Shown here: positions 7,297 through 60,894 of the stretch, in pieces
Numbering within the stretch: position 1 is the stretch's first letter
Layout: each line of letters begins with the position of its first letter
Assembly: GCF_016433145.1 (NCBI RefSeq)
Contig: NC_058134.1
Coordinates: 284,221,308-284,285,307, forward strand
Direction: 5' to 3'
Origin: Gracilinanus agilis
Lineage: Eukaryota
Length of the DNA: 64,000 bases
Notes under the pieces: model-generated
Database searches by the model: none
The model's input: only the letters and a program-made list of their open reading frames with translations
Told to the model about the DNA's origin: nothing
Program-made: the position numbers and the translations under genes

Positions 7297-7563
7297 CAAA
7301 CAACAGATTCTTTGGGGATTCAGGTTCAAAATAAGTAATGAATCTATCATATAATTGACAAGAAATAAAACAACTTTAAAGAGGTAGCTATGGGACCTCT
7401 GTTCCCTGAAAAAGGAAGTCTCTGTTACAGCGTTAGAAAATATGCTTAAATAGTTAGTCTTACACTAGAGCAGACCCTTGGCATCTCCGTGTTTTTCTCC
7501 ACACCATCTAAAGGATCATTCTGATTCTGCAATCAGGATAATTCTCGGGAGGGTTCCCTGGGA
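7297..7563 (-). promoter_or_regulatory. Predicted OR-A promoter module (TTGTTTG, O/E, homeodomain, distal O/E)
   Basis: CAAACAA 7297-7303, TCTTTGGGGA 7309-7318, TAATGAATCT 7336-7345, TCCCTGGGA 7555-7563; same arrangement upstream of the other three ORs. Confidence 0.7.
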
Positions 7564-8404
7564 TAGATCAGATACCAGGGGAGTCCTAATCACCCAATAT
7601 CCCAGGAGGTTCTTAGGCATTTTATTCCTTCCTTCTTTCTTTCTCATCTACATTTAATTCTATGAGTCCACATCTACATTTTAATAGGATTTTAATTTTA
7701 TTACTTCTACCACTGCAACTTGGGATTCCTTTGTACATTTACATTTTGTAGTATTCTTGGCCATTGACTCCCATAGGTCCCCATAGATAAAGTACCCAGA
7801 ACACTGGAGATCATTCCTCATGCTTTTTAATGTTTAATGGAGACCAATAACTCTCAGGCTATTCATTTGTGTGATCTTTTGCTATCTTTATATGATAATC
7901 CTACATTTTTTTCTGGTCATTTATTTCTTTAGCCCTATCTCATATACTGCTCCTTGTTTAGAAGGAGTAGTTGATAAACTCCTACCAACTTTATTCCCCT
8001 CTTTGTTCCTCCATTCCTCTTTGGTTTGCCCACATCTTTGATTTTTTGATATATCATTTAATTCTATACTAATGAGCACAACCTAGATTAGAATGGGTTA
8101 CAAAGACTGTTCTTTGCTTCAAGGAGAATTTTAAGGCAGTGAAATGCACAAGGAAATTTTACCAATACAGATGAGCAATATCTCTTTAGTTCATTCATTT
8201 CTTGGTCCAGCTGATTGTTGATCTGTTAAATATGACCAAGGAAAATATACTGATGTTCAGTTGAATGTTATGAACTGGATAATTTATAGTCAAAGAATTC
8301 TTGGTTATTTCAGTGTGGATGGTTAGGCCCATCCATGAAGGAGCATTTATTGTGTTTTGGGGCCATCTACTAAGCCTAATGTTATTTACTAACATAACAT
8401 CAAT

Positions 8405-10330
8405 TTCATTCAATCAAGAAATGCTTATGAAGCACCTACTATGTGCCATTTATCTTTTAAGCCCTGGGTAAAGATGAGATATTTTTACAAAAATTTTCAA
8501 AATATGCAAAATAAATATATGTAATTATGGGTAGGGACACTACTAGATGGTATCTGGGATGTCCTCATATAAGCAGAATACTTTGAGGTGGACTTTGAAG
8601 GGCACCAGAGTTTCTAAGTGGGGGAAATGAGGATGGAATATGTTTAAGACATGCATAGTATTTGGAAAGAATCAAAGGTGGGTGATGGAATTCTCCATTT
8701 AAGAAGTAGCAAGGTATAGCTACAAGTTGTTAAAAGAAATAGGAGTAATGGAGATATATGTATAATGATAGTGATGTGTATCTGTCTATGATTTCCTCAA
8801 TTTCCAATTGGCTGGGAGGAATACCTACTCTTCTCTGGCTGCTGCTGTAAATTATCCCCTTTCTCCCTGACAGGCTTAGTTGATTAATCTGTCAGTGATT
8901 CCTTTAACAGCTGCCCAAGTGAGGACCCTTGAGAGGTTAGGTGGATGGTTAACCTCTCTAGGCCCAACCTGGGGTTAGATAGATTGGTAGTGGGCTATTG
9001 ATTAGCTTTGGATAATGATTAGGATCTGACTGTGTATTTGATCTCCCTTCCTAAGGGCTGTGATGGAATGACCACTCAGGAAGGTACCTGCTGTTAAACA
9101 CTATTTATCTATTACTAGGGAAAGGATAACAAGGTAAAGGATTGGGGATTGGAAACCCTATCACTCTATTAACTATTAAACTAATTGATAATCAGGACTG
9201 GAGGCTGCTGGTCTGGTGGAGGCTTAAGGTCTTCACTCTCTCTCTATCCCTGACCAGATCTGGCCACAGCCAAGCCAGAGAATAGGGAAGGCTATTGCTG
9301 AAAATAGATATTGATGGTCTTTGTATTCTCTCAGCTCTCTCACCAATAGTGTTGATGGTTCACTAGCTTCCACAGTCTAGCAAGGAAATAGATTCGGGCT
9401 TTTCCTACCCTCTTCATCTTCAACCACCCTTCTGCCCTTCAATCACCCTTCAACCATCCTTCAGCCACACTCTGCACAGATTAATCCACAGAGGTTGCTC
9501 AAGTCTCAACTCAGAGATCTGTGATCTCCAGTTCTGAGCCTCTGAGTCCAGAGACCTCCTCCACTATAGCTGTAAGGGGGTATATATAGGGTGGAGCTAA
9601 CCGACATTTGCCCCTGGCTTACGGCACCTGGGAACATTCCAAATCTCTCAACTGCCATCCCTGTCAGTCAAGGTGGCATCCATGTCATCCCAGATTAATA
9701 ATTATAACATTATACATAACCCCGAATCACAATCACAATCACATCTCTGGCACCAGAATTTTTAAGTGGGGGAAATGAGGATGGAATATGTTCAAGACAT
9801 GGGGCACAGTCTTTGGAAAGAATCAAAAGTGGGCAATGGAATTCTCCATTTAAGAAGTAGCAAGGCATAACCACAAGTCCAATTTGGTTGAACCATAAAG
9901 TGCATGAAGGGGGCCAAAGTACAATAACCCTGGAAAAGGGGGATAAAATATAATAATCCTGAAAAGTCCTTTGGAACAGCTTGTGAAGGGTTTTAAATGA
10001 AAGAAAAGGATTTTTGTTTTCTGTCCTAATGAAAAGGAGTCCCTGGAATTGAACAATTAGGACAGTGATATGATCAGCATTGTGCTTATGCAAAATCATT
10101 TTTGAAGTTATTTAAGGGTGAAATAGAGAGGGGACCAGATTAAACAGAGAGAATAGTTATCAAACTTTTTCATAAACTAGATTTGAGGTGATGAGGGCAT
10201 GAAATTGTGCATTAATCATATAAGTTAATGGAAAGACCCAGATGTAAGAGATTTTGTGGAAGTAGATTCAACAAGACTTGACACCAAATTAAATATGCCA
10301 TTAGTTAGCAAACAGGGCCAACTTAACCAG
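8405..10330 (-). mobile_element. Decayed L2 LINE fragment, interrupted by an LTR
   Basis: CATTCAATCAAGAAATGCTTATGAAGCACCTACTATGTGCC (antisense L2 3' end) and typical L2 body. Confidence 0.65.
8728..9743. mobile_element. Solo LTR-like insertion
   Basis: TGTTA...CACA ends; lies exactly between two copies of a ~128-bp host segment. Confidence 0.6.
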
Positions 10331-10559
10331 CAAAGGATAGTTTGGAGAGAGTCATTTCAAAGTCTGGATAGGAAGTAGGTAAGGAAATGGCAAAACAAAG
10401 GCCATGTGTACATTGTTTACAGTAGAACTGGTGTGTGGGATTGTAGAGTCAAAATGGCAAAATGGAGTCTTTTCCCAATAACAAAGAGCAGAGTCAGGCA
10501 AATTGAAAAATTATGTGGGTAAGTAATGTTTGAAAATGAATTTAGGAATAGAGTAGATA

Positions 10560-12229: not shown

Positions 12230-14295
12230 TCCTCTTTCTGGGTTTCTTTTTTTATTTGTATATTTCTTGTATTTTTCCATGTAGAAACAGTTTTTATAAC
12301 ATTGTTTTCTGACTTTTTTGCAAAACAAATCCTCTCCTTCCCTTTATCACCTCATCCCACTTCAGGCAGAAAAATCTGATATGGATTATTCCAGTGTTGT
12401 CATGCAATACAAATTTCCATATTCCTCATATCATGAAAGAAGACATATCACATATATAAGAAAAATATTCATGACAGAAATATGGTGAGAAATGGTTTGG
12501 TTCCATTTGTATTCATACTCTGACAGTTCCTTCCCTGACAGAGCATAACATTTTTCTCATGCATACCTTGGGGGTGTATTGGATCCTTGCATTGCTTATT
12601 ATGTTTAGTCCTTCATAGTTGATCATTTTACAATATTTCTGTTGCTGTGTATATTGTTCTCCTGATTCTGCTTATTTCACTTTACATTGGTTCACATACA
12701 TTTTCCAAAGTTTTTCTGAATTATTCTGTTTATAATTTCTCATGACCCAATAATATTCCACTGCTGCCATATTCCACAATTTTTTATTCAGCCACTCCTT
12801 AATTCAGTTTCCAATTTTTTTGTCTCCACAAAAACAACTGCTATAAATACTTTTATACGTAAGTATTTTTCCCCTATCTATGATCTCTTTGGGACATAGA
12901 CCTAGTGGTGGTATTGCTGGGTAAGAGGGTAAGCACACTTTTATGGCCCTTTGGATGTGGTTCCAGAATGTTTGTATCAATTGACAGCTCTACCAACAGG
13001 ATATTAGTATTCTAATTTTCCCATATCCCCTCTAATATTTATCATTTTCATTTTCTGTCAGATTAGTCACATTAGGTTTGTGGAGGTATCTCAAATGTTT
13101 TAATTTGCATTTCTCTAATCAGTAATAATTTTAAGTATGATTAGATATGATTTTGATTTCTTCATTTGCCTATACTTGTATGCTTTTGACTATCAATTGT
13201 AGAAAGTCATATATTCTTATTGATTAAAGTAATTTCTCCATATATTTGAGAAATGAGACAAAATTTCTTGCTACAAAAAATTTCCCCAGTTTGTTTTTTC
13301 CCTTCTCATTTTGATTTCATTAGTTTTGTGTTTGTACAAAACCTTTTAAATTTAATGTAATTAAAATTATCCAATTTACTTATAATGTTGAATATTTTTA
13401 TACATAGATCTGACAGTTAAACTATTCTGTGTCCCTCTAATTCATTTGTGATATGTCCCTTTATTTATAGATCATACATCCATTTTGATTTCATCTTTGA
13501 ATATGGTATCTGCCATACTACTTTCCAGTTTTCCTAGCAGTTTTTGTGAAATAGTTTTTCTCCTAAAAAGAATGAATCTTTGGGTTTACTGAATAATAGA
13601 TTACCACAGTCATTGATTACTGTGTGTTGATTACCTAATCTATTTAATTGAACCACTACTCTGTCTTATTAGCCACTACCCAATTGTTTTGATGATTACT
13701 GCTTTTTGGTACAGTTTGAGATTCAGTATGACTAGGTTTCCATCCTTCATATATTTTCTTGAAGCCTTTAATATCCTTGATATTTTGTTCTTCCAGATAA
13801 TTTTTGTTTTTACTTTTTCTGGCTCTATTAAATATTTTTGGGTAGTTTGATTGTCATGACAACAAATAGGTGAATTAATTTAGGCAGAATTACCATTTTT
13901 ATTGTTTTGGCTCAGCCTACTCATGAGCAATTAATGTTTTGTCTAGTTGTTTGGATCTGAATTTTTTTTTTTTTGCGTGTGAAAAGTGTGTTTTAACTGT
14001 GTTCACATAGTTGCTTAGTTTGTTTTGGTATTTTATGTTGTCTTTAGTTATTTTTGAGGGGTATTTCTCTTTCTATCTCTGGCTATTGAATTTTGTGGTA
14101 TATAGAAATGCTGATGGTTTATGCAAGCTTATTTTATGTCTTGCAACTCTGCTAAAGGTTTTAATTGTTTGATTAGTTTCTCAATTGATTCTCTGAAATT
14201 CTCTCAGTACACCCTCATATTATCTGCAAAGAGTGATTGTTTGGTTTCCTCACTGCCTGTTTTATTTTTAATTTCTTTTTCTTCTCTCTTTTCTA
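12230..14295 (-). mobile_element. Degraded L1 (3'UTR plus ORF2 3' part)
   Basis: T-rich antisense L1 motifs (TTTAATTTGCATTTCTCTAATCAGT, CCATGAGCAATTAATG). Confidence 0.8.
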
Positions 14296-14557
14296 ATTTA
14301 AATATTTATTAACATTCATTTTTAACATGGTTACCTGATTCATGCTCCTACTTTCCCCTTCACCCCCCGCACTCCCCCCACCCATGGCCAATGCACATTT
14401 CCACAGGTTTTGTCATGTGTCCTTGATCAAGACCTATTTCCAAATTGTAGGTAGTTGCATTGGTGTGGTAGTTTCGAGTCCACATCCTTAATCATGTCCA
14501 CCCCGACCCATGCCTTCAAGCAGTTGTTTTTCTTATGTGTTTCCTCTCCTGCAGTCC
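14296..14557 (-). mobile_element. Younger L1 3'UTR, truncated by the gap
   Basis: TTGATCAAGACCTATTTCCA and GCAGTTGTTTTTCTT match the L1 3'UTRs at 18295-18560 and 37560-37860 in reverse. Confidence 0.8.
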
Positions 14558-14957
14558 NNNNNNNNNNNNNNNNNNNNNNNNNNNNNNNNNNNNNNNNNNN
14601 NNNNNNNNNNNNNNNNNNNNNNNNNNNNNNNNNNNNNNNNNNNNNNNNNNNNNNNNNNNNNNNNNNNNNNNNNNNNNNNNNNNNNNNNNNNNNNNNNNNN
14701 NNNNNNNNNNNNNNNNNNNNNNNNNNNNNNNNNNNNNNNNNNNNNNNNNNNNNNNNNNNNNNNNNNNNNNNNNNNNNNNNNNNNNNNNNNNNNNNNNNNN
14801 NNNNNNNNNNNNNNNNNNNNNNNNNNNNNNNNNNNNNNNNNNNNNNNNNNNNNNNNNNNNNNNNNNNNNNNNNNNNNNNNNNNNNNNNNNNNNNNNNNNN
14901 NNNNNNNNNNNNNNNNNNNNNNNNNNNNNNNNNNNNNNNNNNNNNNNNNNNNNNNNN
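14558..14957. other. Assembly gap (400 N)
   Basis: Run of N. Confidence 1.
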
Positions 14958-15099
14958 TATATATGTGTGTGTGTGTGTTTATACACACACATATTTCTCT
15001 TAGAAACAAAATGTAATAGAATCTATGTAAATATTTCATATGCTTTGGAAGCATTATTCCCCTCATTTTGTAAATTTTGTAGTATTTTGGAATAAAAAT

Positions 15100-16800
15100 A
15101 CTTCTATTATCACCTCTAAGATTTTGCTATTATATAGAAATGCTGTTGATTTTTGAGGATTTATTTTGTAGCCCCCAACTATTTTGAAGATATTAACTGC
15201 CCCAGTTAGCACCTTTTATGATTCCCTGGAATTTTTCAAGTAAATCATATATCATTAGCAAGTAAGGATAGATTTTATCTTCTTTTGACTTTTATTTTAT
15301 ACCTTCAATTTCTTTCTTTTTTGTCATATTACTATTGCTAGCATTATACCAATTAATAGTGCAGAGAGAGGATCCTTGTTTTACTACTCATTTTACTTAT
15401 AAAGTTTCTAATGTATCTGAATGATACATGATGCTTGTTTTCAGTTTTAGATAGGTTTTAAATGATATTAAAAGATCTCTTTTTGCCCATATTTTATAGG
15501 GTTTTATGAAAATCAGTGTTATACTTTGTCAAAGGTTTTTCTTATACCTATTGAGATAATCATGTAGTTTTGGATTTAAAATTTTCATTATTGTTGATTG
15601 TTTTCCTGATGTTGAGCCATCTTTATATCCATAGTAAAAATTCAACTTGGCTATGATGAATACTTTTTGGATCAACCGCTGTTGATTATTCATTTTTATT
15701 TATATTCATCTTCAAATTTTATTTATTTTTAAATAAGCATTCATTATAATATTGGTCTATATATTCCTCATGCTTTGTTCTTCCTTAGTTTAGATATTTA
15801 GATTAGATTTAATCAAAAGACTTTGTCTAATCAATAGAAATTTTTATTTAGAAGGGAAATCCAAAATAGTGACCTGAGAAGCTTTAATTTTATTAAGAGT
15901 ACAGCTAATAAAGAATTAAATAAGAACAAGATCATTGAAGTAAAGAATAAATGTCTAGAATAGAGAAAATAAAAATGAAGGGAAAATATGCAATAGATTA
16001 TATGGTTAGAAGAGGATAACATATATTTCCCTCCATTTCCCCCTAATATTTTTCCCACCCCCCATGGGACTCCTTTCCACTCTTCCTTCCATCTGTAAAC
16101 ATGGAATTAAATTACTTCAAATGTTACAATTTAATATATTTTTGAAAATTTGTTCCCATTGGCTCTCTTTACCTGACCCATAACTCTCCCCTGCTCCTAC
16201 TTTTTCTTATCCCTTTTACTTTTAGTTTCCTGTTCTTTCTTGCTTTATCTGTTATTTTATTGCTCCCCTCTATTTTTTCTCTGAAAAAAATGTTCAAGTA
16301 AAATCTCCTAATCTCTTCTCCATGTCAATCCTATTTTTTCATTAGCTTTATAAATTTAATTTTCTGGTGCCTTTTCCCAAAAAGAATTTATTTCCCTTAT
16401 TCTTTTCATTATTAGTTTCCCCTCTTTTTCTCTTTTATACTCTAATATTCTGATCATGGCCCTCAGGTTTATTTAATTCTTCTTTGGTTTCTCTATTGCT
16501 CATGAATCTGAAGCTTCAAAGGAGTTCCTTCTCCTAAACAATTTATCTGTAAATGCTATGTAGATCTTACCTTTTTGCCTTTTTGTGTGTGTGTGTGTTA
16601 TACACACTCTTAGAAATACAAATTCCTGCAGATGACAAAGAAGATATTGACTCATGATGGGAATTTTCTTTATTTTTTCATAAATATTACTCCATATTGA
16701 TTTCTAGGTCTTCTTCTTGATCAAGTGTGTATTCATTTTCCTTTGTTTTGGAATACATATTCATATAGGTGAAGATGTTTTTAGCAGGTTTTGGAGGCCA
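15100..16800 (-). mobile_element. Old, heavily diverged L1 fragments
   Basis: TTGAGATAATCATGTAGTTTT and GATGTTGAGCCATC antisense ORF2 motifs. Confidence 0.6.
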
Positions 16801-22588: not shown

Positions 22589-22833
22589 GGCATAGGAAGG
22601 GACTCTTAGTGCACTGGTACTTCATCCATGGATGAAAGTTTAAATTCCATCAGGATGAAAGCTTGTAGAGGAGTCTTATAATGCATTGGTGGAAAGGAAT
22701 GTTCCTTTGTAATTGAAATAAAGGTGTGGCAATATGGAAACAAACATGGAGGAGAAGAAAAAAAAGAAGGGACCAAATATGTCAGAATCTTTTGAGCTAT
22801 ATGTTGTCTGAGATTACCGTAACATCTGACCTG

Positions 22834-23096
22834 TCTCAGGGAACTCTCCATAGATTTTCCTGACTTAAGCATCAGTGCTATTCTTTAGGTGATATAGAGA
22901 GAAACAGGGAGATATCATGGACCTGTTATATGGTAGGACTCTCAGTGTCTAAACACTATGTTTAATGTTGTAATGGTATCTAGCTATCCCTGTAGACATA
23001 GGCCCCATAGCTATTCATTTAAATTTTTTATTTAATGCTGATTATGTTAGATTCATTAGTTATCTCACTCTTACTCCCCAAGGAATCTATTGTTTG
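22834..23096 (+). promoter_or_regulatory. Predicted OR-B promoter module
   Basis: TCTCAGGGA 22834-22842, AGATTCATTA 23049-23058, TCCCCAAGGA 23075-23084, TTGTTTG 23090-23096. Confidence 0.72.
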
Positions 23097-23728
23097 TTTT
23101 CTCACTTGATCCCCAAAAGCCTTTACCAGACTGAATGAATAAAAAATTAGGAGGAAAACCCCACATTCTTGCCCAGAATGGTTAGGCTTTTCCTTCAAAA
23201 ATTCAGAGACAAGTCTGTACATTCCTTTCCACTTCCAGTATCTGAACTTCCTTTCAGCTCTAGCACAAGATTTCTGACTTTTATTCAACAGTTAGTTGAG
23301 AGACAGAAGAGTGGCCAGCAGCACTAAATCTTTGGAGATGGGCATCAGCCACAAAGATGTTTGTGAGGTGTGAAGTTCTAGGCACCAGATTTAGGTTGTG
23401 CTCTAAAATGTCCATACAATTGACATCTTGAAGTAAACCAAGGAAGAATAGCTGAGATAAAACTTCTTCTTTATAGGAGTGGAAATTGAGTCTAAAGGTG
23501 GTCAACGAGCCAGAGATCATGATCAATAATGGGAATTTTAAGTCTAGGTGAGCTCCCTCAGAGCTCAAAACAAATTTACTAATAGTCTCAGCCCACAGGG
23601 TAACTATTCCATGACCTAGATAATAGCTTCATGATAGTCCTCCCAACTGCCTGCACTCATGTTCATCTTTGAGTCCTAACAGTGGTTTTGGGGTTATTCT
23701 GGCCACTGATGAACTCTATGAAGCACTC

Positions 23729-23745: not shown

Positions 23746-26397
23746 AAAATAATTTTCTCATCTTGTATCTGTGAAGATTCTGATTGCTTCCCAATTTCCT
23801 CCATACAAGAACATAGTGGTCAGACCAATCTACTTCAAATATCAAAACTTGTAAAATATAAGAACAAAAGGAAACAAAAAACTTATGAAATTACTTTAGA
23901 TATGTCAGGGAGAGAGCAAACAATTCGATATGTCACAGCTTTTAGAAAATGACAAGATGTTTGCATTTTACATTCCCAGAATAGTGGAGGTGGAAATAGC
24001 TTTAGTAAGTGGATTATGTGTGATCTTCTGTGATCTACAGAGTATTGGGAAAATGTCCTTTAGGAAAGATACCATATACCAATGGTGCTAGAATTCCACA
24101 ATTGAAGGCTAATTTCATTTGTTACAAATTGATTTTCTTAAATTGATGCCCCTGACCATTAAAAAAAGATTTTGTTAACTATTTTAATAAAGTAAGTGCC
24201 GATTCAATCTTATGTATTTTACATGTTTAAAAATATTAATCTGAGAGGGCATCCATAGCTTTCACCAGACTTCAAAAGGTGTCCACAACACAAAAACTTT
24301 AAGAATTCCTTCTTAGAGAAAAATTTCACAGCAGAATGAACAGATGATAAAGTTAGTGTTTGGAAAACAAAACACTCATATGACAATGCTATGGAGAGAG
24401 AGAGATAAAAAACATATAGGGATATAAAGTATTGAGTCATTTACTACTCAATATAAAAATTCCCACTGTATGTAACCATATCAGCTACTCAAACCTTATT
24501 GCTAATTCATTTATCAAAAGATTAAAAGGTTTAGAGATAGAAAGGTCCTTAGAAATCATCTTGAGATCATTCCATTGAAGAGACAAAGAAGCTGAGACTG
24601 AAAGATTATGTGACTTGCTTAAAATAACATTCTATTTTAAGGGGCAGTGACTGGTTTGAATGTTTCTAATGGAGATCTCTTCAGACATAGAAGATCTCAG
24701 AAAGCTGGTCTCTTCAGAATGAGGATCAGGTTCCAAAATTTTTTCAGAAGAAATTGGTTAAACATTCACATTCAGAATCTTCTTGATGTTTGGGACAGAA
24801 AGTGGGAAATTCTGGGACCCCTGTGACCAGAGGAGTTGGAAGCATGGACAGCAGAGAATGGTACATGGAAAGGGAACCATAAGGGCTTCAGAAACAGTCT
24901 GCGTCTTTTTCACAATATTTCTCATGGTCAGCCCTGCTTACCATCTGAAGTCAGATGTGCCTAACTCTTCCTTCAGGACATCCCCTAGTGAAAGATACTG
25001 GGGACAATAGGATATAGGGGAGAGCAGATGGTTGAGCAAAGTTCTGGTGTGGGAAGCAGAAGATGGAATATTAATCAGGATTGACTCACAATTAAAATTA
25101 CTATGACTCACTTTTAAAGTTCAGAAAGTACTTTCTTCCCTGCAGGGCTAGGCAATTTGTGTTGCAAGAATGAGAATCCTCTTTTTACACAAGAAGAAAG
25201 TAGGTTTTCAGACACCAAATTACTTCCTCATGGCCACAGAGCCTGTAAGTGTAAGAGTCAGAACATGAAACTGGATTTCCTGAAGCCCCAGGTTGTGCAG
25301 TGGAAAAAGTGCCAGCTGTTAAGTTAGGAAGAACTGAGTTCAAATCTAATTTTAGCTATTTATCAGCTGTGTGATCCTTAGTAAGCCACTTAATCTCTAT
25401 TTGCTTTAGTTTTCTCAATTGTAGAATGGGGAGAAAAATAGCACTTACCTTCCAGGGCTGTGAAATTCAAATGAGTCAACAGCATCTGGCACATAGTAAA
25501 GGCTTTGTAAATGCTAATTATTATTTTTTTCTTTCCATGCTTTTTAAAGAAATGATTACATGTGTTAACTAATTTCCACACAGATTTTCCTAAGGTACAT
25601 CATTTAACTTATCTCCATCCCTCCCTTTTCTTTCCCCTCCTAGTACTAGCAGGGGATATGATCTGGGCTCTACATGTATTATCTTGCAAAATATAATTCC
25701 ATATTGTTTATTTTTAAGTCAGTAATCTTATAAAACAAAAACCTCCAAACATAGACCCAAACAAAACAACTGAAAATTCATATGCTTTCATTTGCATTTT
25801 AACTCCAACTCTTATTTTTCTGGAGATGGATAGCATTCTTGTCATAAGTGCCTCAGAATTGTCCTGGATCATTGCTTTGTCTAAATCCATCATAGTTGAT
25901 CATTCCATAATATTGCAGTTACTGTGAACAATGTTTTCCTGATTCTGATTATTTCACTCTGGATCAGTCCAGAAGTTTTTTCCAGCTCTTTCTGAAATCA
26001 TCCTGTTCATCACTCCTTAGAGCACAACAGTATTCCATCATCATCTATATCACAATTTGTTCAGCCATTCTCTAATTGATTGACATCCCTTTAATTTCTA
26101 ATTGTTTGCCATCATAAAAGACCTCTAGCTATTATTATTATTATATCTATTTTAGCTATTCTTCTGACTCCATGTGCAGTGTTATAGACTGTGACTGAGG
26201 AAAGAAGTAAAGGAAGGACTTTGTGTGAAGAATGATGAGAGAAGATTTTGACAAGAGATTGTATTTGGAAGGGCAAAAAATATTAATTCTGAAGAAATCA
26301 TAAAGTATAAGTAGAGATGGTGGAAGAGTGGAAGTTACTTGTTTCCTTTTTCCTCCCACTTATCACTTATTCTCATTATCTCCTCAGATATAGATTC

Positions 26398-26419
26398 TTC
26401 CTTTTCCTTTCATTTGCAG
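26398..26419 (+). promoter_or_regulatory. 3' splice acceptor of 5'UTR intron of OR-B
   Basis: TTCCTTTTCCTTTCATTTGCAG|A, 25 nt before ATG. Confidence 0.8.
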
Positions 26420-26444: not shown

Positions 26445-27383
26445 ATGAGAAATCACACAGGGATAACATTGTTCATACTGCGGGGACTGACAGATGATCC
26501 ACAGCTGCAGGTTGTGCTTTTTATCTTTTTGTTTCTCAACTATATGCTCAGTATAATTGGAAACCTGACAATAATCACTCTTACCTTGGTGGATCCCCAT
26601 CTTAAAACTCCCATGTATTTTTTCCTCAGAAACTTTTCTGTCTTAGAAGTCTCATTCACAACATCCTGCATTCCCAGATACCTCTACAGCATATCCACTG
26701 GGGACAATACCGTTACTTATAATGCCTGTGCCATGCAACTATTTTCTGTCATCTTTCTTGGGGCAGCAGAGTTCTTTCTTTTGGCCACCATGTCCTATGA
26801 TCGCTATGTGGCCATCTGTAAACCTTTACATTATACAACGATCATGAATAACAAAGTATGTAACAGGCTCCTGCTGACTTCTTGGCTGTCTGGGCTGCTG
26901 ATCATCCTCCCACCACTTAGCCTGGGCCTTCAATTAGAATTCTGTGACTCCAATGTTATTGATCATTTTACCTGTGATGCATTTCCCGTGTTAGAGATTT
27001 CATGCACAGACACGACATTCATAGAAAAGATAGCTTTAATTGATGCTATATTGACACTCATCATCACCTTACTCTTTGTGATTTGGTCTTATGCCTCCAT
27101 TGTCCGGACTATTCTGAGATTCCCCTCTGCCCAGCAAAGACAAAAGGCCTTTTCCACTTGTTCATCCCACATGATTGTTGTCTCCATCTCATATGGTAGT
27201 TGCATCTTCATGTATGTCAAATCTTCTGCAAATGAAATGGTAGCTTTGAACAAGGTGGTGTCAGTTCTCATGACCTCTGTTGCACCAGTGATGAACCCCT
27301 TTATTTATACTCTGAGGAACAAACAAGTCATACAAGCTTTTAAGGACTTTGTTAAAAAGATTGCAATTCTCTTAAAGCAGTAA
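26445..27383 (+). CDS. Olfactory receptor (class II, OR6C-like), 312 aa, intact (OR-B)
   Basis: All canonical OR motifs; closest in-window paralogue is OR-A, in opposite orientation. Confidence 0.97.
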
Positions 27384-40343: not shown

Positions 40344-41282
40344 TTATTGCTTTGAGAGGAATACAAATCTTTTAATTGAATCCTTAAAAGCTTGTATCAC
40401 TTGTTTGTTTCTTAGGGCATAAATAAAGGGGTTCATAACAGGAGCAACTGAAGTTGTGAGCACTGTCACTACTTTGTTCAAAGTCACTCCTTCCTTTGCA
40501 GAGGGTTTGATATAAATAAATATGCAGCTGCCATAGGTGATGGAGACAACAATCATGTGAGAAGAACAAGTGGAAAAAGCCTTTTTTCTTTGTTGAACTG
40601 AGGGGAATCTCAGAACTGTCCGAATAATGTTTATATAGGATAAAAAAACTAGGAATAAGGTGATAATGAGTGTCAATATAGCAAAGATCAGAACCATCTT
40701 CTCTATGAATTGTGTATCTGAGCACGCAATCTTTAACATGGGAAATGCATCACAACCAAAATGATCAACAACATTGTAGTCACAGAATTCTAATTGGAGG
40801 CCCAGACTAATTGGTGGAATGATGATCATCAACCCAGCCAGCCAAGAACCCAGGAGGAGCTGTTTACAGACTTTGTTGCTCATGATAGTTGTATAGTGCA
40901 GAGGTTTGCAAATGGCCACATAACGGTCATAGGACATGGTGGCTAGAAGAAAAAATTCGGTTGCCCCAAGAAGGATGACAAAAAATATCTGGGCAAAGCA
41001 AGCAATATAGGTAATGGTATTGTCTCCAGTTGACAAGTTGTAGAGATATCTGGGAATATAGGAAGTTGTGAATGCCACTTCTAAATAGGAAAAGTTTCGA
41101 AGGAAAAAATACATTGGTGTTTTCAGTTGTGCATCCATCAAAGTAAGGATGATTATGATTAGATTCCCAACTATACTCAAAACATATGTGAGAAATAGAA
41201 ATATGAAAATCAAAACCTTTAATTGTGGATCATCTGTTAGTCCTCGAAGGACAAATAACATTATTCCTGTGTTGTTTCTCAT
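40344..41282 (-). CDS. Olfactory receptor (class II, OR6C-like), 312 aa, intact (OR-C)
   Basis: Canonical OR motifs; 34 of 312 residues differ from OR-D by manual count (~89% identity). Confidence 0.97.
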
Positions 41283-41300: not shown

Positions 41301-41326
41301 CTGTGGGTAAAGGAAGAGAGACAGGC
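41301..41326 (-). promoter_or_regulatory. 3' splice acceptor of 5'UTR intron of OR-C
   Basis: Minus strand TCTCTCTTCCTTTACCCACAG|G, 18 nt before ATG; same spacing in OR-D. Confidence 0.8.
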
Positions 41327-41639
41327 TAGATTTGGGGAAGAAAATGACAAAATGTCTTCCCCACTGAGAATCAGAGGGAAAAATCCAGGCAAGTTGTCAC
41401 TGGACCTTCATTTTATTTGATAAGAAACAATATCCCTAGTGTGGACCTGAGCATCTCTCAGCTATAAATTAGAGAGAATAAGTAGATGGTTTGTTTAAAA
41501 ATTTTTTTTCTTAACACTTATTCAGACTCTCTAACTTACATGCATTTCTTCCTCATCTCTTCATGGCTACCACCCTTTGCATTTTAATCCACATTAAATT
41601 TTTCTCATTAATTTTCACTCAAAATCTAATAATTAAATA

Positions 41640-45867: not shown

Positions 45868-46518
45868 TCTCATTCAGTAGAGTAGCTCCAAATTTTCCTG
45901 GTATGACTCAATTCTGAGCAACAGTGTGTGAGTAGAGGTAGCATTGTATGATAAGAAAACAAATAGATTTGTAATCTTTGAGTCCCAGCCCTGCTACTTA
46001 TGATGTTATCTTGTTTAAGTTCCCTTAGCTCAATGATACTCACTTTCCTTATCTTCAAATAAAAGTTTTGGATTAAATCAAGTCTGAATCCTTTTCTAAT
46101 TTTAATAATAAAATCCCAACTGTATATCACTCTCTGATCATACTTGTAATGTAGTATCTTGTATGTCTCCAGGACCCAGACTATTACACTAAGAGGCAGT
46201 TATGTGACTATTTCCCATTTTCAGGTCTTTCGAGGTTCTTTATCCACCTGTTCTTCTCACTTATTCTAAACAAATATTACACCATAGATTTATTGCCAAT
46301 TTAAAATTAGGTTATATTTCCTTGTACTTTTTGTACCTAAAGGGGAAATAGGCTTAGTATAAAAAAGTAATGTTTGAATCTATTTCTTTGTGTTTTAAAA
46401 GAGGTCTGATCTCTCTGAATAGTGAAACATTTCCCTATAAATTTAACAGGAATGACAACAGACAATATTTGTTATATCTACTTAATATCCTTAGGCACAC
46501 AAGAATGAAATAAGTACA

Positions 46519-46798
46519 CAAACAAAACAGTACTTAGGGACTTGGATTTAAGAAGCACTAATGAATCTCCTATGTAATAAACTTTGGCTGATGTCCACAG
46601 AGACCAGAGTATGATAATAGCATCAGATACAGTGGTGAACAAATGATGGGTATACAATGAAACAGGGCCTTTGATCCAATCACTCTACTGTATGTTATCA
46701 GAGAGGGTTTTAGTCAAATGGTAAGGGAGAAGCAATTTGGGATTTCTTGGAGCAGGATAGATTTCAGAGAAATCACAAACATTTTATGTCCCATGGGA
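46519..46798 (-). promoter_or_regulatory. Predicted OR-C promoter module
   Basis: CAAACAA 46519-46525, TACTTAGGGA 46531-46540, TAATGAATCT 46559-46568, palindromic TCCCATGGGA 46789-46798. Confidence 0.72.
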
Positions 46799-47050
46799 TT
46801 CTGAGATATGTTATCATCTTTTGTAGATAGTCGTTTTCCTTGAAGGTTAATTCAAAGGTGTAATATGAGAACTTCAAAGGATCTCCAACTCATTAATTTA
46901 GGTAATGCCTCTACGCAGTGCAAATTGTGAACTTTACATGCCCTCTTATCTTCAGTGATTCTTCAGTAAGAATTTACCCAAATGAATTGAAGGTCATTTC
47001 CTAGGTCTTTTAACATCTCATGATTTCAGTACAACATTTGGGTTATCTAC

Positions 47051-49113: not shown

Positions 49114-49118
<5 letters not shown>

Positions 49119-51301: not shown

Positions 51302-51799
51302 ATTCCTAAAGAATAAATAGTAACAGAAATAACATAAGGAAATAGACAGTAAAACTTTACTAGTCAGGAACCTCAACTTTCCCCTCTCAGAAATAGATAA
51401 AGCCAACCAAAAAAAATAAGAAAAAGGTTAAGGAGATAAATAAAACTTTAGAAAAATTAGATATGATAGACCTGTGGATAAAATTGAAAATAGAAGATAA
51501 TATACCTTTTTCTTAAAAGTATATGGCACCTTCACAAAAACTGAACATATAATAGGGCATAAAAACCTCTCACCCAAATGTAGAAAAACAGAAATAATAA
51601 ATGCATCATTTTCAAACCATAATGCAATAAAATTACATTCAACAAAGGGCAGCAGAAAAAAATTAAAATAAATTGGAACCTTATTTTTTTTTGGTTCGCT
51701 TTATCTATTTCTGAGAGGGGAAAGTTGAGGTTCCTGACTAGTAAAGTTTTACTGTCTATTTCCTTATGTTATTTCTGTTACTATTTATTCTTTAGGAAT
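51302..51799. repeat. Near-perfect inverted repeat: arms 51302-51420 and 51680-51799, 259-bp spacer
   Basis: Arms are reverse complements except one substitution and one extra T. Confidence 0.95.
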
Positions 51800-56105: not shown

Positions 56106-57044
56106 TTATTGCTTTGAAAGAAAAAAAATCTTTTTAGCTGAGTCCTTAAAAGCTTGTATCACTTGCTCATTTCTTAGGGCATAAATTAAGGGGTTCATAA
56201 CAGGAGCAACTGAAGTTGTGAGCACTGTCACTGCCTTATTCAAAGCTACCCCTTCTTTTGCAGAAGGTTTGATATAGATGAAGATGCAGCTGCCATAGGT
56301 GATGGAGACAACAATCATGTGAGAAGAACAAGTGGAAAAAGCTTTTTTTCTTTGTTCAGCTGAGGGGAATTTCAGAACTGTCCTGAGAATGTATACATAG
56401 GATAAAAATACTAAGAACAAAGTAATAATGAGTGTCAATACAGCAAAGATCAAAATCATCTTTTCTATGAATTGTGTGTCTGAGCATGCAATCTTTAATA
56501 TGGGAAATGCATCACAACCAAAATGATCAATAACATTGTAGTCACAGAATTCTAATTGGAGGCCCAGACTAATTGGTGGAATGATGATCATCAACCCAGC
56601 CAGCCAGGAACTCAAGAGGAGCTGATTACAGACTTTGTTGTTCATGATGGTTATATAGTGCAGAGGTTTGCAGATGGCCACATAACGGTCATAGGACATG
56701 GTAGCCAGAAGAAAAAATTCGGTTGCCCCAAGAAGGATGACAAAAAATATCTGGGCACAGCAAGCATTATAGGTAATGGTGTTGTCTCCAGTTGACAAGC
56801 TGTAGAGATATCTGGGAATATAGGAAGTTGTGAATGCCACTTCTAAATATGAAAAGTTTCGAAGGAAAAAATACATTGGTGTCTTAAGATGTGTATCCAT
56901 CAAGGTGAGGATGATTATGATCATATTCCCAATTATACTCAAAATATATGTAAAAAATAGGAAGATGAAAATCAGAACCTTTAGCTGTGGATCATCTGTT
57001 AGTCCTTGAAGGATGAATAACATCATCCCTGTATTGTTTCTCAT
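56106..57044 (-). CDS. Olfactory receptor (class II, OR6C-like), 312 aa, intact (OR-D)
   Basis: Canonical OR motifs; likely start MRNNTG at 57044, matching OR-C. Confidence 0.96.
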
Positions 57045-57062
57045 CCCTGACTGCTGGTGAAT

Positions 57063-57088
57063 CTGTGTGTAAAGGAAAGGAGACATTC
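57063..57088 (-). promoter_or_regulatory. 3' splice acceptor of 5'UTR intron of OR-D
   Basis: Minus strand TCTCCTTTCCTTTACACACAG|A, 18 nt before ATG. Confidence 0.8.
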
Positions 57089-57523
57089 ATTGCAGAAAGA
57101 GAATGAATTTGGGGAAAAGGAAGGCAAGTCATTACTGGACCTTCATTTTACTTGAAAAGAATCAATATCACAGATGTCTTGACCTGAGCATCTTCCTGTT
57201 ATGAATTAGGGAGAATAAATGGGGAGTTTTCATAGAGATTATTTTTGAAAACTAATACTCTTTCCCACCCTTGCATAAGCTCTCTATCTACATCAATTCT
57301 TCCATATCTCTTTATAACTAATGCCATTTGTATTTCAGGTCTCATTAATCTCATTAATTTCTAACTCAAAATCCAGCCATCCCTCCTTTTCCTTAACCCC
57401 ACAGCAGATGGTCAGGGCATCTTGTTTAAAATTTTTGGCTCTGAAGCTTATTACTTTTGATTGTGGGCAATCATCAAACATTCTTTTTGTCATATTTAAA
57501 ATAAGGCTAGTAGCTCTTTTCCA

Positions 57524-59350
57524 GGGCGGAGCCAAGATGGAGGAGTAAACTACAGCAGCTCCATGTCACCACAAGAATCCTCTGACCAAGATTAAAATAT
57601 CTCTGCAAAACAAATACAGAAATGAAAGAACCAACAAGGAGACAGAGTGAAACAACTTTCAAGGAAAGAAAAACCCAAAAGTTAGAGATCATCTAGGGAA
57701 CTGGGGTGAGAGGAAAGCAGAGCTAGCAAAAGGTTGTAGCAAGGAGTGAAGAGCAAGCCAAGCCACCCCCCCCCATGTCCATCCCTATCCCACATCAGCT
57801 GTCCAGGTTTGGAACCTAAGTACAAGCTAACATTCAGATCATGGGATTCTGCCTGGGCATTTCAAACCTGTGGAGAAGACTGGAGCCCAGGGAAGTCTAA
57901 GCTGAAGTGGGCTGATCTTTGTGGACTCAGAATGAAGCCAGGATTTCCAATCTGGGCTTGGGATAAAGATATAGTGCACAGTTTGGGGTGGCTGGCAGTA
58001 CTAAATACTAAATACTGATCTTTCAGTTCAGGGCAGAGCTCCAAGACAGGGATCAAGTATACACAGCAAAACCAAAAACTTGAGCCTTAGCCAGGGACTG
58101 GAATTTGATCAGCCCCTGACCTGATCAAGGTCAGAGTGAGATCAAAAGCTTATACTCAAGGCTAAGGCAAGTCCTTAAGCCATCAGCTTAACAAAGGCCA
58201 ATTGAATCATCAGAGGGAGGGGGCTTCCAGAGTTCTCAGCCCTCAGATCCAGAAAATAAGCTGAAAATAGCATTAAGGAAGGACTGAAGCTTAAGTGGGA
58301 ACCCCAACTTCCCAGAAAATAGAGCCTACCTATACTTAAATTTCAGTCAATTTGAGAATTATTGGACTCCCTGAAACCCATGATGAAGAAAAATCCTTGA
58401 ACATCATATTACAAGAAATTATCAAAAATAACTACCCAGAGATCCTCGAACAAGAAAATAAAATTGAAATTGAAAGAATTTATAGATCACCTCCAGAAAG
58501 AAATACTCAAATGATAACTTCCTGGATCTAATAGCTAAATTCAAGAGGCTAAGGAGAAAAAATTTTATGCAGCCGGAAAGAAACCATTCAAATACCATGG
58601 AACTATGATCAGGATCAAACAGTACCTAGTGGCTCCTACAATAAAGGATTGAAAGGTATGGAATATGATATTCAGGAAAGGCAAAAGATTTGGGTTTACA
58701 ACTCCAGCAAAACTGAGTATATTCTTTCAGAGAAAAAATGGGCATTCAATAAGATAGAGGATTTCCAAGCATTCCTGAGGAATAAACCAGACCTAAACAA
58801 AAAATTTGAAGGCCAAGCACAAGACACAAGAGAAGCCCCAAATGGAAATAAGAAAGAGAAAATTTAAAGAGCTCATTAAGGTCAAAATATTTAGGGGCGG
58901 CTGGGTAGCTCAGTGGAGTGAGAGTCAGGCCTAGAGATAGGAGGTCCTAGGTTCAAAACCCGGCCTCAGCCACTTCCCAGCTGTGTGACCCTGGGCAAGT
59001 CACTTGACCCCCATTGCCCACCCTTACCAATCTTCCACCTATGAGACAATACACCGAAGTACAAGGGTTTAAAAAAAATAAAAAAATATATTTATATGTC
59101 TACATGAAAACAGGATTTTTGTAATTCTTTAAAATTAATCTTAATAGTAGAGAAGGTAGAAGGAATTTACTCAGAAATAGGGTAGAGAAGGAAGCCGATT
59201 ATGATGATATGATTTATATGATCATATAGGATGATATGATGTATATGTAAATGTGATGATATGGAACAATATATATATATGATATGATATGTATGCATAT
59301 GAATGATATATTAAAAAATCAAACAAGAGCTGAAAGAGAAGGTTGCACTG
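57524..59350 (+). mobile_element. L1 5' end (5'UTR, decayed partial ORF1, spacer), 3'-truncated
   Basis: Starts GGGCGGAGCCAAGATGG; ORF1-like IIGLPETHD...IEIERIYRSPP segment. Confidence 0.8.
58894..59087 (+). mobile_element. Young full-length SINE1_Mdo-like SINE inserted in the L1
   Basis: Intact CpGs, A-tail, AAAATATTTA-like flanks. Confidence 0.93.
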
Positions 59351-59987
59351 AGAGAAACTACAATGGACTCCCTCTTGCCTCTAGAAAAAAAGAGCAGCAT
59401 CTGTATTTGCCTTTTAAAGCCCTTCCTAACCCATCTTCACCCCACCTTTCCAGGTTCATTGTCTATTATTCTGCTTTGTATTCTTTCCATTCCAAGAAAC
59501 CTAACCTGATTGCTCTGCTCCAAATATAACATTCAAGGTGCCATTAATTTTTTTTAAAAAAACAAGTTGTTTTCCAAGGTTGGATTATACTTCCTCTTTG
59601 CCTCCATTTTGAAGCATCCCTGACTTCTTTCAAAACTCAGCTCCAATGCCATCTCCTTTCATATTCTTCTCCTGGGCTCTCAGTTGTTAGTGCCCTATTT
59701 CAAGATAATTTTGAATGTATTATTTGTTTAATTTTGTACTTACATGCTTTTCCCCTTAATAGAAACATGAAATCTACTATTACTAAAGCTGGTCCACTTA
59801 TCCTTGATTAGAAATTAAAATACAAAAAGCTTAATATTTACTGGAAAACTGGTATCTCAGAAATGAGTATTAATTTTTCCCTGAAACATTCATAATATTT
59901 GACAAAATTTTGGATTTTTGCAAACAGTCCCACACTTTCCATGTTTATAAATAAAAAATGAAAATTTGTGACACAGAAAATCATTCT

Positions 59988-60000
59988 CATACTTACTTTT
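59988..60000 (-). promoter_or_regulatory. Predicted splice donor of a 5' non-coding exon of OR-D
   Basis: Minus strand AAAA|GTAAGTATG. Confidence 0.65.
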
Positions 60001-60627
60001 TTGGACCTTCCTTGGATTTCATTGGGTAGAGTAACCCCCAAATTTTCTGGTATGACTCAATAATGAGTAATAGTGTTTTAGTAGAGGCAGCATGCTGTCA
60101 TGAGAAAATGAGTAGATTTGTAATCTTTGTGTTCCAATTTTGCTACTTAGATGTGTTATCTTGAATTAGTTCCTTAACTTCAATGATCCTCAGTTTCCTT
60201 CTCTGTAAATTAAGTGTTTAGATGATCTCTACCTTCTTTTCTGGTTTTAATCCTAAAATCCTAATTGTATGCAAATTTCTCATTACATTTTGACACAAGA
60301 ACCCAGAATGTTATACTCACTGACAGCTCTGTGACTTCTCCACATTCAATTTCTTTCCTTTTGGATTCTACACCAATATCCTTTCTTACAGATTCTTTTC
60401 CTTTTTAACAGTAGGTCATATTTCTCTGTATTCATTATACCTTACAGCAAGACAGGTCTATTCCCCTCCCCTACAAAAGGAATTTTAGAATCCATTTCTT
60501 TGCATTTCAGAATAAAAGGGCTAGTCTTTCTTAGTAGTGAAATTGCTTTCCTTATAAATTTTAAATGAAAGACAATTTGTTTTATCTGCTTAATCTACTA
60601 TAGACTCAAGAGGATAACATGAGTGCA

Positions 60628-60894
60628 CAAACAAAATGGTCCTTAGGGACTTGATTTAAGCAGCACTAATGAATCTATGTAATCAACTTTGCCTGGTGCC
60701 CAGAGAGACTAGAGGGTGCCATAATAGATTCAGATAGAGTACTCAACAGTGATAGGTGTTCAATGAAGTAGACTTCTGATCCCACAATTCTGCATTTATT
60801 CAGGGGATTCTTAGCCAAGGTTGTGGAAAATCTATTTGGGATTCTTTGGAGAACAGATTTCAGAGAAATCCCAATCATTCTGTATCCCACTGGA
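60628..60894 (-). promoter_or_regulatory. Predicted OR-D promoter module
   Basis: CAAACAA 60628-60634, TCCTTAGGGA 60640-60649, TAATGAATCT 60667-60676, TCCCACTGGA 60885-60894. Confidence 0.72.

What the first reader, a model, noticed from the sequence alone, without database searches (positions are those of the whole stretch)
7297..60894. Same multi-part promoter module at near-fixed spacing upstream of all four OR6C-like genes
Seen in sequence, read in gene sense: each gene has AGATTCATTA, then 16-18 bp, then TCCCYAAGKA/TCCCCAAAGA, then TTGTTTG 5 bp later. Positions of the three parts: OR-A 7336/7309/7297, OR-B 23049/23075/23090, OR-C 46559/46531/46519, OR-D 60667/60640/60628. A second O/E-like site lies ~210-230 bp further upstream in all four (7555, 22834, 46789, 60885). 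The module is 2.8-5.3 kb from the ATG and flips orientation with the gene, while the flanks have largely diverged. Established: homeodomain (Lhx2-type TAATGA) plus O/E (Ebf, TCCCNNGGGA) sites are the core of mammalian OR promoters. Inference: this is the OR6C-clade proximal promoter, and the invariant TTGTTTG (forkhead-like core) may be an unrecognised third component.
Basis: partly seen in the sequence, partly recalled or inferred. Interest (0 to 1): 0.72.

Follow-up and report, generated by a model that had tools for sequence, protein, structure and literature searches.

The report
Shared promoter of OR6C smell-receptor genes
Each of the four OR6C-like smell-receptor genes in this opossum window has the same small, very old control block a few kb upstream; it is almost certainly their promoter, of a well-known type, with one extra conserved short site (TTGTTTG) whose binding protein is unknown.

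Summary
The three-part pattern occurs exactly four times in 64 kb, against none in shuffles. There is one copy per OR6C2-like gene, in the gene's orientation, 2.7-5.2 kb before the ATG.

The four copies are homologous. A model built from marsupial copies finds the module upstream of related genes in Tasmanian devil, koala and monito del monte, and in a deer. It is therefore probably older than the marsupial/placental split, and its internal spacing is almost unchanged.

Across 13 copies the 27 motif columns changed about 1.15 times per column. Neighbouring core columns changed 2.7 times and flanks 3.5 times.

The module is larger than described. It also has a GATTAYAT block and a TATA-like box about 40 bp after TTGTTTG. 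Every coding exon is preceded by a conserved splice acceptor.

The best reading is a classical olfactory-receptor promoter (homeodomain + O/E + TATA), which is a known kind. This scan found similar family cassettes before on other DNA of this genome.

TTGTTTG is as conserved as the known sites in marsupials, and its variants fit the forkhead consensus, but all three deer copies break it. The "second O/E site" is not one homologous, conserved site.

The parts
7250..7449 (-). OR-A conserved promoter block. Contains GATTA-type block 7349-7357 (CAATTATAT), homeodomain site 7336-7345 (AGATTCATTA), O/E-like 7309-7318 (TCCCCAAAGA), TTGTTTG 7297-7303 and TATA-like 7250-7257 (AAATAAAA).
22949..23144 (+). 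OR-B conserved promoter block. Contains GATTA-type block 23039-23047, homeodomain site 23049-23058, O/E-like 23075-23084 (TCCCCAAGGA), TTGTTTG 23090-23096 and TATA-like 23137-23144 (GAATAAAA).
46472..46639 (-). OR-C conserved promoter block. Contains a degenerate GATTA-type block 46572-46580, homeodomain site 46559-46568, O/E-like 46531-46540 (TCCCTAAGTA), TTGTTTG 46519-46525 and TATA-like 46472-46479 (AGATATAA). A second TATA-like string (TTTATAGGG) follows about 30 bp downstream in the C/D clade.
60580..60746 (-). OR-D conserved promoter block. Contains GATTA-type block 60677-60685, homeodomain site 60667-60676, O/E-like 60640-60649 (TCCCTAAGGA), TTGTTTG 60628-60634 and TATA-like 60580-60587 (AGATAAAA).
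7554..7566 (-). OR-A upstream O/E-like string TCCCAGGGAA (alignment block U2).
   Evidence: conservation not above background
22831..22843 (+). OR-B upstream O/E-like string TCTCAGGGAA (block U2; two mismatches to TCCCNNGGGA).
46787..46801 (-). OR-C upstream perfect O/E palindrome TCCCATGGGA (block U1; not homologous to the A and B sites). It is kept in the C/D-clade copies of Dromiciops.
60883..60897 (-). OR-D upstream O/E-like string TCCAGTGGGA (block U1).
4596..4625 (-). OR-A 3' splice acceptor: pyrimidine tract plus CAG, with the AG ending at 4596, 26 nt before the ATG.
26390..26419 (+). OR-B 3' splice acceptor: pyrimidine tract plus CAG, with the AG ending at 26419.
41301..41330 (-). OR-C 3' splice acceptor, with the AG ending at 41301.
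57063..57092 (-). OR-D 3' splice acceptor, with the AG ending at 57063. The 14-codon extension of the ORF is a read-through of this tract.
3635..4570 (-). OR-A coding exon (311 aa from the conserved ATG; the ORF runs on to 4696).
26445..27383 (+). OR-B coding exon (312 aa).
40344..41282 (-). OR-C coding exon (312 aa).
56106..57044 (-). OR-D coding exon (312 aa from the conserved ATG).
14558..14957 (.). Assembly gap (400 N). It is intergenic, is not part of any module, and was not filled.

Best explanation
The module is the core of the ancestral proximal promoter of the OR6C olfactory-receptor family. It was copied with each gene duplication and has been kept by purifying selection.

Reading downstream in gene sense, about 200 bp hold:
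- a GATTAYAT block (bicoid/K50-like homeodomain string);
- a CTAATGA/CTAATTA homeodomain site (Lhx2/Emx2 type);
- 16-18 bp later, an O/E (Ebf) site, TCCCYAAGGA;
- 5 bp later, TTGTTTG;
- about 40 bp later, a TATA-like box.

Inferred mechanism. In an olfactory neuron, Lhx2-type and Ebf factors bind the two known sites and recruit Ldb1 and enhancer hubs. TBP binds the TATA-like box. Transcription then starts about 30 bp further on, in a short non-coding exon that is spliced over a 2-5 kb intron to the conserved acceptor 18-26 nt before the ATG.

What is shown: the sites, their order and spacing, their selective constraint, their age and the acceptors. What is inferred: the binding factors, the start site and the first exon's donor.

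TTGTTTG is most likely a real additional factor site, at least in marsupials. A forkhead-class factor is the best guess and Sox the second, and the site may be lineage-specific.
For: 1. Occurrence. The pattern occurs 4 times against 0 expected, once per gene and in gene orientation. No extra copy is found in the window by nhmmer.

2. Homology and age. An HMM built from five marsupial copies found the module 2.3-4.5 kb upstream of OR6C-like ATGs in Sarcophilus, koala and Dromiciops (E 1e-19 to 1e-31). It also found three copies in Cervus canadensis that played no part in building the model (E 3e-10, 2e-9, 4e-8). One of these lies 3.0 kb upstream of an intact OR6C2-like gene.

3. Constraint, by pairwise identity. 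Among 10 marsupial copies the mean pairwise identity is 0.89 for the homeodomain site, 0.86 for O/E and 0.89 for TTGTTTG. The mean over all 531 well-aligned columns is 0.52. The three motifs rank 1, 3 and 4 of about 520 sliding windows.

4. Constraint, by parsimony. On the 13-copy tree the 27 motif columns changed 1.15 times per column. Other core columns changed 2.71 times and flanks 3.48 times (Mann-Whitney p 2e-6 and 1e-11).

5. Spacing. It is kept in all 13 copies, deer included: 16-18 bp, then 5 bp (4 in koala), then 38-42 bp to the TATA-like box (32 in one copy).

6. Homeodomain turnover. When the homeodomain site changes it keeps a TAAT core. It is TAATTA in Dro7 and Cer8c, and a shifted TTAATC in Sarcophilus.

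7. Splice acceptor. A pyrimidine tract plus CAG lies 18-26 nt before the ATG in all four genes and in five of the six marsupial relatives shown; the Dro6b copy shows no clear CAG. An upstream non-coding exon is therefore required.

8. Composition. GC is 32-38% and CpG observed/expected is at most 0.11 around the modules. This matches the published AT-rich, CpG-island-free OR promoter type (PMC3247239; PMC12547500).

9. Literature. O/E sites are enriched within 200 bp upstream of the TSS, homeodomain sites (including bicoid-like TAATC) are enriched and conserved, and TATA boxes are enriched at -61 to -10 (PMC3247239).
Against: No shared strong 5' splice donor follows the TATA-like box. The strongest candidates sit in MIR-like SINE sequence.

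The TATA-like strings are weak (AATAAAA, GATAAAA), and such strings are common in DNA with 35% GC.

The module was not found within 10 kb upstream of a Peromyscus OR6C2 gene or of one Dromiciops gene.

The O/E site has one mismatch to TCCCNNGGGA in most copies.
Confidence: 0.75

Rival explanations
1. The block is a conserved gene-linked regulatory element but not the TSS-proximal promoter. It could be an upstream or intronic enhancer, or an alternative promoter, with the main start lying elsewhere in the 2.7-5.2 kb before the ATG or further upstream.
For: No TSS was mapped. No conserved splice donor was found downstream of the TATA-like box. OR enhancers also carry homeodomain and O/E sites, and Foxj2-type sites have been reported in them (PMC5318403).
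Against: There is one copy per gene rather than one per cluster. Its orientation is strictly tied to the gene. A TATA-like box sits at a fixed distance. The homeodomain and O/E sites are 16-18 bp apart, not fused into the composite motif of the known OR enhancers (own knowledge of Monahan et al. 2017, PMC5608512, which was listed but not read). No other conserved block lies between the module and the acceptor across clades.
Confidence: 0.15
2. The similarity is only neutral residue of tandem gene duplication, and the motifs have no function.
For: The four copies are homologous by descent, and the pairs A-B and C-D still align over 0.5-1.1 kb.
Against: Flanking sequence of the same age has decayed to 45-52% pairwise identity or cannot be aligned, while the motif columns stay at 86-89%. 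Motif columns carry about a third as many substitutions as the flanks on the tree. The block and its spacing survive between marsupials and a deer.
Confidence: 0.03
3. The block is part of an interspersed repeat (transposable element) that happens to lie near OR genes.
For: The window is rich in SINE- and LINE-like repeats, some of them close to the modules. MIR-like sequence follows the module in the A clade.
Against: nhmmer finds no copy outside the one-per-gene positions, either in the 64-kb window or in about 147 kb of distinct related loci. Every copy is in gene orientation, and the copies in Sarcophilus and koala lie at collinear, orthologous positions.
Confidence: 0.02
4. TTGTTTG is not a separate factor site. 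It is conserved only as a spacer or flank of the O/E footprint, or it is a Sox-type site rather than a forkhead site.
For: It starts only 5 bp after the O/E 10-mer. ATTGTT or TTTGTT (Sox-like core) is present in B, C and D. All three deer copies have lost the forkhead fit while keeping O/E, homeodomain and spacing. Forkhead matrices were not among those enriched in 314 mouse OR promoters (PMC3247239). TRTTTRY occurs 2.7 times per kb in this window by chance.
Against: The 5 bp between O/E and TTGTTTG vary freely, while the heptamer does not. The four changes within TGTTTGY in marsupials are all transitions at the three degenerate positions of TRTTTRY, and none falls at the four fixed T positions. 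Copy A lacks a Sox fit.
Confidence: 0.45

Closest known systems
Mammalian class II odorant-receptor proximal promoters (homeodomain + O/E sites, often a TATA box), such as M71, MOR23 and P3, and the genome-wide sets of Young 2011, Clowney 2011 and Plessy 2012
   Same: It shares an AT-rich, CpG-poor context and an O/E-like site and TAATGA/TAATTA homeodomain site within about 100 bp of each other. It has a TATA-like box downstream, lies kilobases upstream of a single coding exon, and a 5' UTR intron ends just before the ATG.
   Different: The TSS is not mapped here. The module keeps a near-fixed internal spacing over 13 copies and about 160 My (this age is own knowledge of the therian split). 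It also carries two further conserved blocks, GATTAYAT and TTGTTTG, of which the second is not a recognised OR promoter motif.
Family-wide conserved promoter of the mouse mOR262/OR37 cluster (Hoppe et al. 2003, Genome Res 13:2674; cited in PMC12547500, paper not held)
   Same: Paralogous OR genes of one family share a conserved block upstream of the TSS with O/E and homeodomain sites that was inherited through duplication. The earlier scan findings s1-170993 and s1-181971 describe the same kind of thing for OR13 and another OR family in this genome.
   Different: The OR family is different (6C) and so is the motif string. I could not read the paper, so this comparison rests on the review's description and on my own knowledge.
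OR cluster enhancers ('Greek islands': H, P, Lipsi and others)
   Same: They contain homeodomain and O/E sites, and Foxj2-type sites have been reported in them (PMC5318403).
   Different: Those are one or a few per cluster, act independently of orientation, and have a fused Lhx2/Ebf composite motif. Here there is one copy per gene, in gene orientation, with sites 16-18 bp apart and a TATA-like box.
Forkhead (FOX) binding sites, consensus TRTTTRY / RYAAAYA
   Same: All 10 marsupial copies fit the consensus, and the observed variants fall only on its degenerate positions.
   Different: No binding has been tested. The deer copies do not fit. The consensus is short and frequent by chance, at 2.7 per kb.

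Membership tests
Mammalian OR proximal promoter (homeodomain + O/E type) | O/E (Ebf) site close to the consensus TCCCNNGGGA | tested here: met
   TCCCYAAGGA or TCCCCAAAGA, with one mismatch (two in OR-C), is present in all four genes and is the slowest-evolving 10 columns of the region.
Mammalian OR proximal promoter (homeodomain + O/E type) | Homeodomain site (TAATGA/TAATTA, Lhx2/Emx2 type) near the O/E site | tested here: met
   CTAATGA on the opposite strand of AGATTCATTAG lies 16-18 bp from the O/E site. It changes to TAATTA in two relatives.
Mammalian OR proximal promoter (homeodomain + O/E type) | Sites lie within about 200 bp upstream of a mapped transcription start | not testable with these tools
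Mammalian OR proximal promoter (homeodomain + O/E type) | TATA box about 30 bp before the start (a subset of OR promoters) | tested here: inconclusive
   A conserved (A/G)ATAAAA or GATATAA string lies 38-42 bp after TTGTTTG in 12 of 13 copies. Its position relative to a TSS is unknown and the strings are weak TATA matches.
Mammalian OR proximal promoter (homeodomain + O/E type) | Non-coding first exon spliced to the coding exon | tested here: inconclusive
   The acceptor is conserved before every ATG. No conserved donor was found after the module.
Mammalian OR proximal promoter (homeodomain + O/E type) | AT-rich context with no CpG island | tested here: met
   GC is 32-38% and CpG observed/expected is 0.00-0.11 within 500 bp either side.
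OR cluster enhancer (Greek island) | Fused Lhx2/Ebf composite motif, few per cluster, independent of orientation | tested here: not met
   There is one copy per gene, always in gene orientation, with sites 16-18 bp apart.
Forkhead binding site | Core TRTTTRY (RYAAAYA) | tested here: inconclusive
   The core is met in 10 of 10 marsupial copies and in 0 of 3 deer copies.
Forkhead binding site | Bound by a FOX protein in olfactory neurons | not testable with these tools
   This needs EMSA, one-hybrid or CUT&RUN.
Interspersed repeat | Many dispersed copies unrelated to gene position | tested here: not met
   Copies occur only at one-per-gene positions in about 211 kb searched.

The most novel reading that the evidence does not exclude
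TTGTTTG, held exactly 5 bp after the O/E site, is a genuine binding site for a forkhead-class (or Sox-class) factor. It would act as a third, family- and lineage-specific component of OR6C promoters in marsupials. Such a family-specific promoter 'address' could set the zone or choice probability of a whole OR subfamily, which genome-wide mouse surveys looking for motifs common to all ORs would have missed.
Probability: 0.25. Interest if true: 0.55.

Novelty: new member of a known kind. Interest (0 to 1): 0.35.

Why it matters
Olfactory-receptor promoters are short, sufficient for OR-like expression, and central to the unsolved question of how one receptor is chosen per neuron. A module kept with near-fixed spacing through many duplications, in both marsupials and a placental mammal, gives a well-defined natural experiment. 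It shows which bases selection protects: two homeodomain-type strings, one O/E site, a TATA-like box and one unassigned heptamer. It therefore offers a compact test object for family-specific promoter grammar. It also marks where the unannotated first exons of marsupial OR6C genes should be sought. It does not reveal a new kind of element.

Tried and rejected
I did not resend trimmed letters, so read laying could not be used.

Orthologue DNA. No DNA was returned for Monodelphis, Trichosurus, Petaurus or Vombatus because the files were too large. The Dromiciops isoform X2 protein P0061, which might have shown an annotated upstream exon, was not on record.

Exact-pattern search. The exact three-part pattern found nothing in the first two fetched loci, both Sarcophilus. 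This is because that orthologue has single changes in the homeodomain site and in TTGTTTG; a profile search found it.

Deer mouse. No module was found within 10 kb either side of the Peromyscus gene with either HMM or a motif pattern. The E=4 hit is noise.

Splice donors. Prediction with an approximate matrix written from memory gave no donor shared across copies. The high-scoring TTACAG|GTGAGGAA and GTCTAG|GTGAGC sites are MIR-like SINE sequence.

ATG-bearing first exon. I looked for an ATG(CAG)GT exon end, as suggested by the Trichosurus model P0004 (MQIIQKSG..., gene span 3162 nt). No consistent hit was found.

Papers not held: Plessy 2012, Clowney 2011 and Hoppe 2003.

Other points. No human contig was fetched. 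The N gap was not filled.


Full report
**What is there**

The window comes from the agile gracile opossum, Gracilinanus agilis. The top protein hits and the window's own proteins show this, as do earlier notes of the scan.

The window holds four intact OR6C2-like olfactory-receptor genes and no further OR pseudogene.
- OR-A: 3635-4570, minus strand.
- OR-B: 26445-27383, plus strand.
- OR-C: 40344-41282, minus strand.
- OR-D: 56106-57044, minus strand.

At the protein level A and B are about 80% identical, C and D about 89%, and the cross pairs 70-77%.

**Check of the observation**

The combined gapped pattern matches four times, against none in 100 shuffles.

The spacings are 16-18 bp and then 5 bp. 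The orientation follows the gene. The distances to the conserved ATGs are 2.7, 3.3, 5.2 and 3.6 kb. A profile search finds no fifth copy in the window.

It lies between the divergently oriented genes A and B, more than 7 kb from either module. It is bordered on the right by a TA/TG microsatellite, and only X-filled pseudo-ORFs cross it. It affects nothing except the estimated distance between modules A and B, and it was not filled.

**Homology**

The four copies are homologous, not convergent. A four-way alignment shows about 500 alignable bp at 63% column identity. Self-BLASTN aligns the upstream regions within the pairs A-B (67%) and C-D (68.5%), while across the pairs only the module region survives. 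The real question is therefore whether the motifs are protected by selection.

**Relatives from other species**

I fetched DNA around OR6C2-like genes with the look-up of encoding contigs.
- Sarcophilus: L001.
- Koala: L004.
- Dromiciops: L005-L007.
- Cervus canadensis: L008.
- Peromyscus: L003.

An HMM of the 130-bp core, built from the four window copies plus Sarcophilus, gave the following hits.
- Koala: 7044-7172, which is 2.8 kb before the ATG.
- Dromiciops L005: 5369-5488.
- Dromiciops L006: 7606-7731 and 16045-16168. Each lies upstream of one of the two genes in that locus.
- Dromiciops L007: 17181-17296, downstream of that locus's gene and probably belonging to the next gene.
- Deer L008: three copies, with E-values of 3e-10, 2e-9 and 4e-8. 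The copy at 6895-6989 is 3.0 kb before an intact gene.

All copies are in gene orientation. No copy was found within 10 kb of the Peromyscus gene or upstream of the L007 gene.

The module is therefore present in both marsupials and a placental mammal, but it was not detected at every OR6C gene sampled.

**Constraint**

I aligned the 13 copies with 250-bp flanks.
- Pairwise identity among the 10 marsupial copies is 0.89 for AGATTCATTA, 0.86 for the O/E site and 0.89 for TTGTTTG. The mean over all well-aligned columns is 0.52. These three blocks rank 1, 3 and 4 of about 520 windows of the same length.
Other core columns have 2.71 and flank columns 3.48 (Mann-Whitney p 2e-6 and 1e-11).

That criterion is not met, so the finding survives its own test.

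**The module is larger than described**

Other conserved blocks are:
- a GATTAYAT string 0-3 bp before the homeodomain block (identity 0.85);
- a TATA-like (A/G)ATAAAA or GATATAA string 38-42 bp after TTGTTTG (0.80);
- two blocks 60-110 bp further upstream, GAGCACTGTATCTRATGC and TCTCTGTGGRCA (about 0.75).

Spacing is almost invariant across all 13 copies, deer included.

Where the homeodomain string changes, a TAAT core is kept. It becomes TAATTA in two copies, and a shifted TTAATC in Sarcophilus.

**The second O/E-like site**

The strings exist at the four stated coordinates. In the alignment, however, A's and B's sites (block U2) and C's and D's sites (block U1) are different columns about 45 bp apart. 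B's has two mismatches. Column conservation is ordinary. U1 is a perfect TCCCATGGGA in OR-C and in two Dromiciops C/D-clade copies, so it may matter within that clade.

**Gene structure**

All four genes have a pyrimidine tract plus CAG 18-26 nt before the ATG, and so do five of the six marsupial relatives shown. This is a conserved 3' splice site, so the mRNA must begin in an upstream non-coding exon, as is usual for OR genes (PMC4154679).

I could not locate that exon's donor. No strong donor is shared after the TATA-like box, and the best-scoring ones lie in MIR-like SINE sequence. The C/D clade has an aligned weak candidate, AG|GTA (AA|GTGAGG in Dromiciops), about 125-135 nt after the first TATA-like box.

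**Interpretation**

The features seen here match the published description of OR promoters.
- Composition: AT-rich and CpG-poor (GC 32-38%, CpG observed/expected at most 0.11).
- Sites: homeodomain plus O/E plus a TATA-like box, in the order and at the distances seen near mouse OR starts.

In mouse, O/E sites peak within 200 bp upstream of the start, and TATA boxes are enriched at -61 to -10. Homeodomain matrices, including bicoid-like TAATC, are enriched and conserved (PMC3247239; review PMC12547500).

A block shared family-wide by paralogous OR genes is also known, from the mouse mOR262 family (Hoppe 2003, cited, not held). The scan itself found analogous cassettes for two other OR families of this genome (s1-181971 and s1-170993; not re-tested here).

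I therefore file this as a new member of a known kind. It is the ancestral OR6C-family promoter, with confidence of about 0.75, limited by the missing TSS.

**TTGTTTG**

In favour of a separate site:
- In marsupials it is as constrained as the two known sites, while the 5 bp between it and the O/E site vary.
- The changes within TGTTTGY are G>A at position 2 (twice, in different clades), G>A at position 6, and T>C at position 7.
- All of these are transitions at the three degenerate positions of the forkhead consensus TRTTTRY. None falls at the four fixed T positions. This pattern was noticed after the fact, so it is suggestive only.

Against:
- All three deer copies break the consensus (GAGTTTG, TTGTGGT, TTGTCTC) while keeping homeodomain, O/E and spacing.
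- Forkhead matrices were not among those enriched in 314 mouse OR promoters.
- TRTTTRY occurs 2.7 times per kb here by chance.
- A Sox-like core also fits three of the four window copies.

Forkhead-type (Foxj2) sites have been reported in OR enhancers but not in promoters (PMC5318403). A 2025 review names no Fox or Sox factor.

The 'third component' is thus a reasonable candidate that may be specific to marsupials. It is not established.

**Limits**

Only one placental species with the module and four marsupial species were available. The copies are related, so the rank statistics are not probabilities; the parsimony counts take the tree into account but rest on one alignment. The donor matrix and several motif consensus strings come from my own memory and are leads only.

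Noticed in passing
window 51302-51416 and 51685-51799: A 115-nt inverted repeat, 99% complementary, with 268 nt between the arms. It could be a hairpin-forming element, a MITE-like insertion or an assembly artefact.
   Followed up: partly
window 1-122, 5595-5779, 22477-22587, 34788-34887, 35780-35947, 58891-59076: A family of short SINE-like repeats, about 120-185 bp long and 76-97% identical, is scattered between the OR genes on both strands.
   Followed up: no
window 12264-14298, 47680-50092, 61887-63443: Long LINE-like repeated segments (65-70% identity) lie upstream of modules A, C and D. One runs up to the left side of the assembly gap region.
   Followed up: no
   Followed up: no
window 4571-4696 and 57045-57086: The mechanical ORFs of OR-A and OR-D extend 42 and 14 codons beyond the conserved ATG. 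In OR-D the extension is simply a read-through of the splice-acceptor pyrimidine tract. Such extended starts appear in some annotated marsupial OR proteins, for example MQIIQKSGM... in Trichosurus.
   Followed up: partly
window 7400-7449, 22949-22998, 46592-46639, 60697-60746: Two further conserved blocks lie 60-110 bp upstream of the homeodomain site: GAGCACTGTATCTRATGC and TCTCTGTGGRCA. Their identity is about 0.75 among marsupial copies, and they are also recognisable in deer. No factor has been assigned to them.
   Followed up: partly
window 46430-46470 and 60540-60580; L005 about 5490-5530; L008 about 16095-16130: The C/D clade and the deer copy Cer8c carry a 20-26 bp stretch after the first TATA-like box with a second TATA-like string (TTTATAAGG or CTTATAAAT). 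The A/B clade lacks this stretch. Which box is used is unknown.
   Followed up: no
window 14958-14995: A TA/TG microsatellite lies directly at the right edge of the assembly gap and is a likely cause of the gap.
   Followed up: yes
protein P0004 (Trichosurus): The annotated gene spans 3162 nt for a 320-aa product, so the public model places a 2.2-kb intron inside the CDS, with the start codon on an upstream exon. No DNA was available to compare its position with the module.
   Followed up: partly
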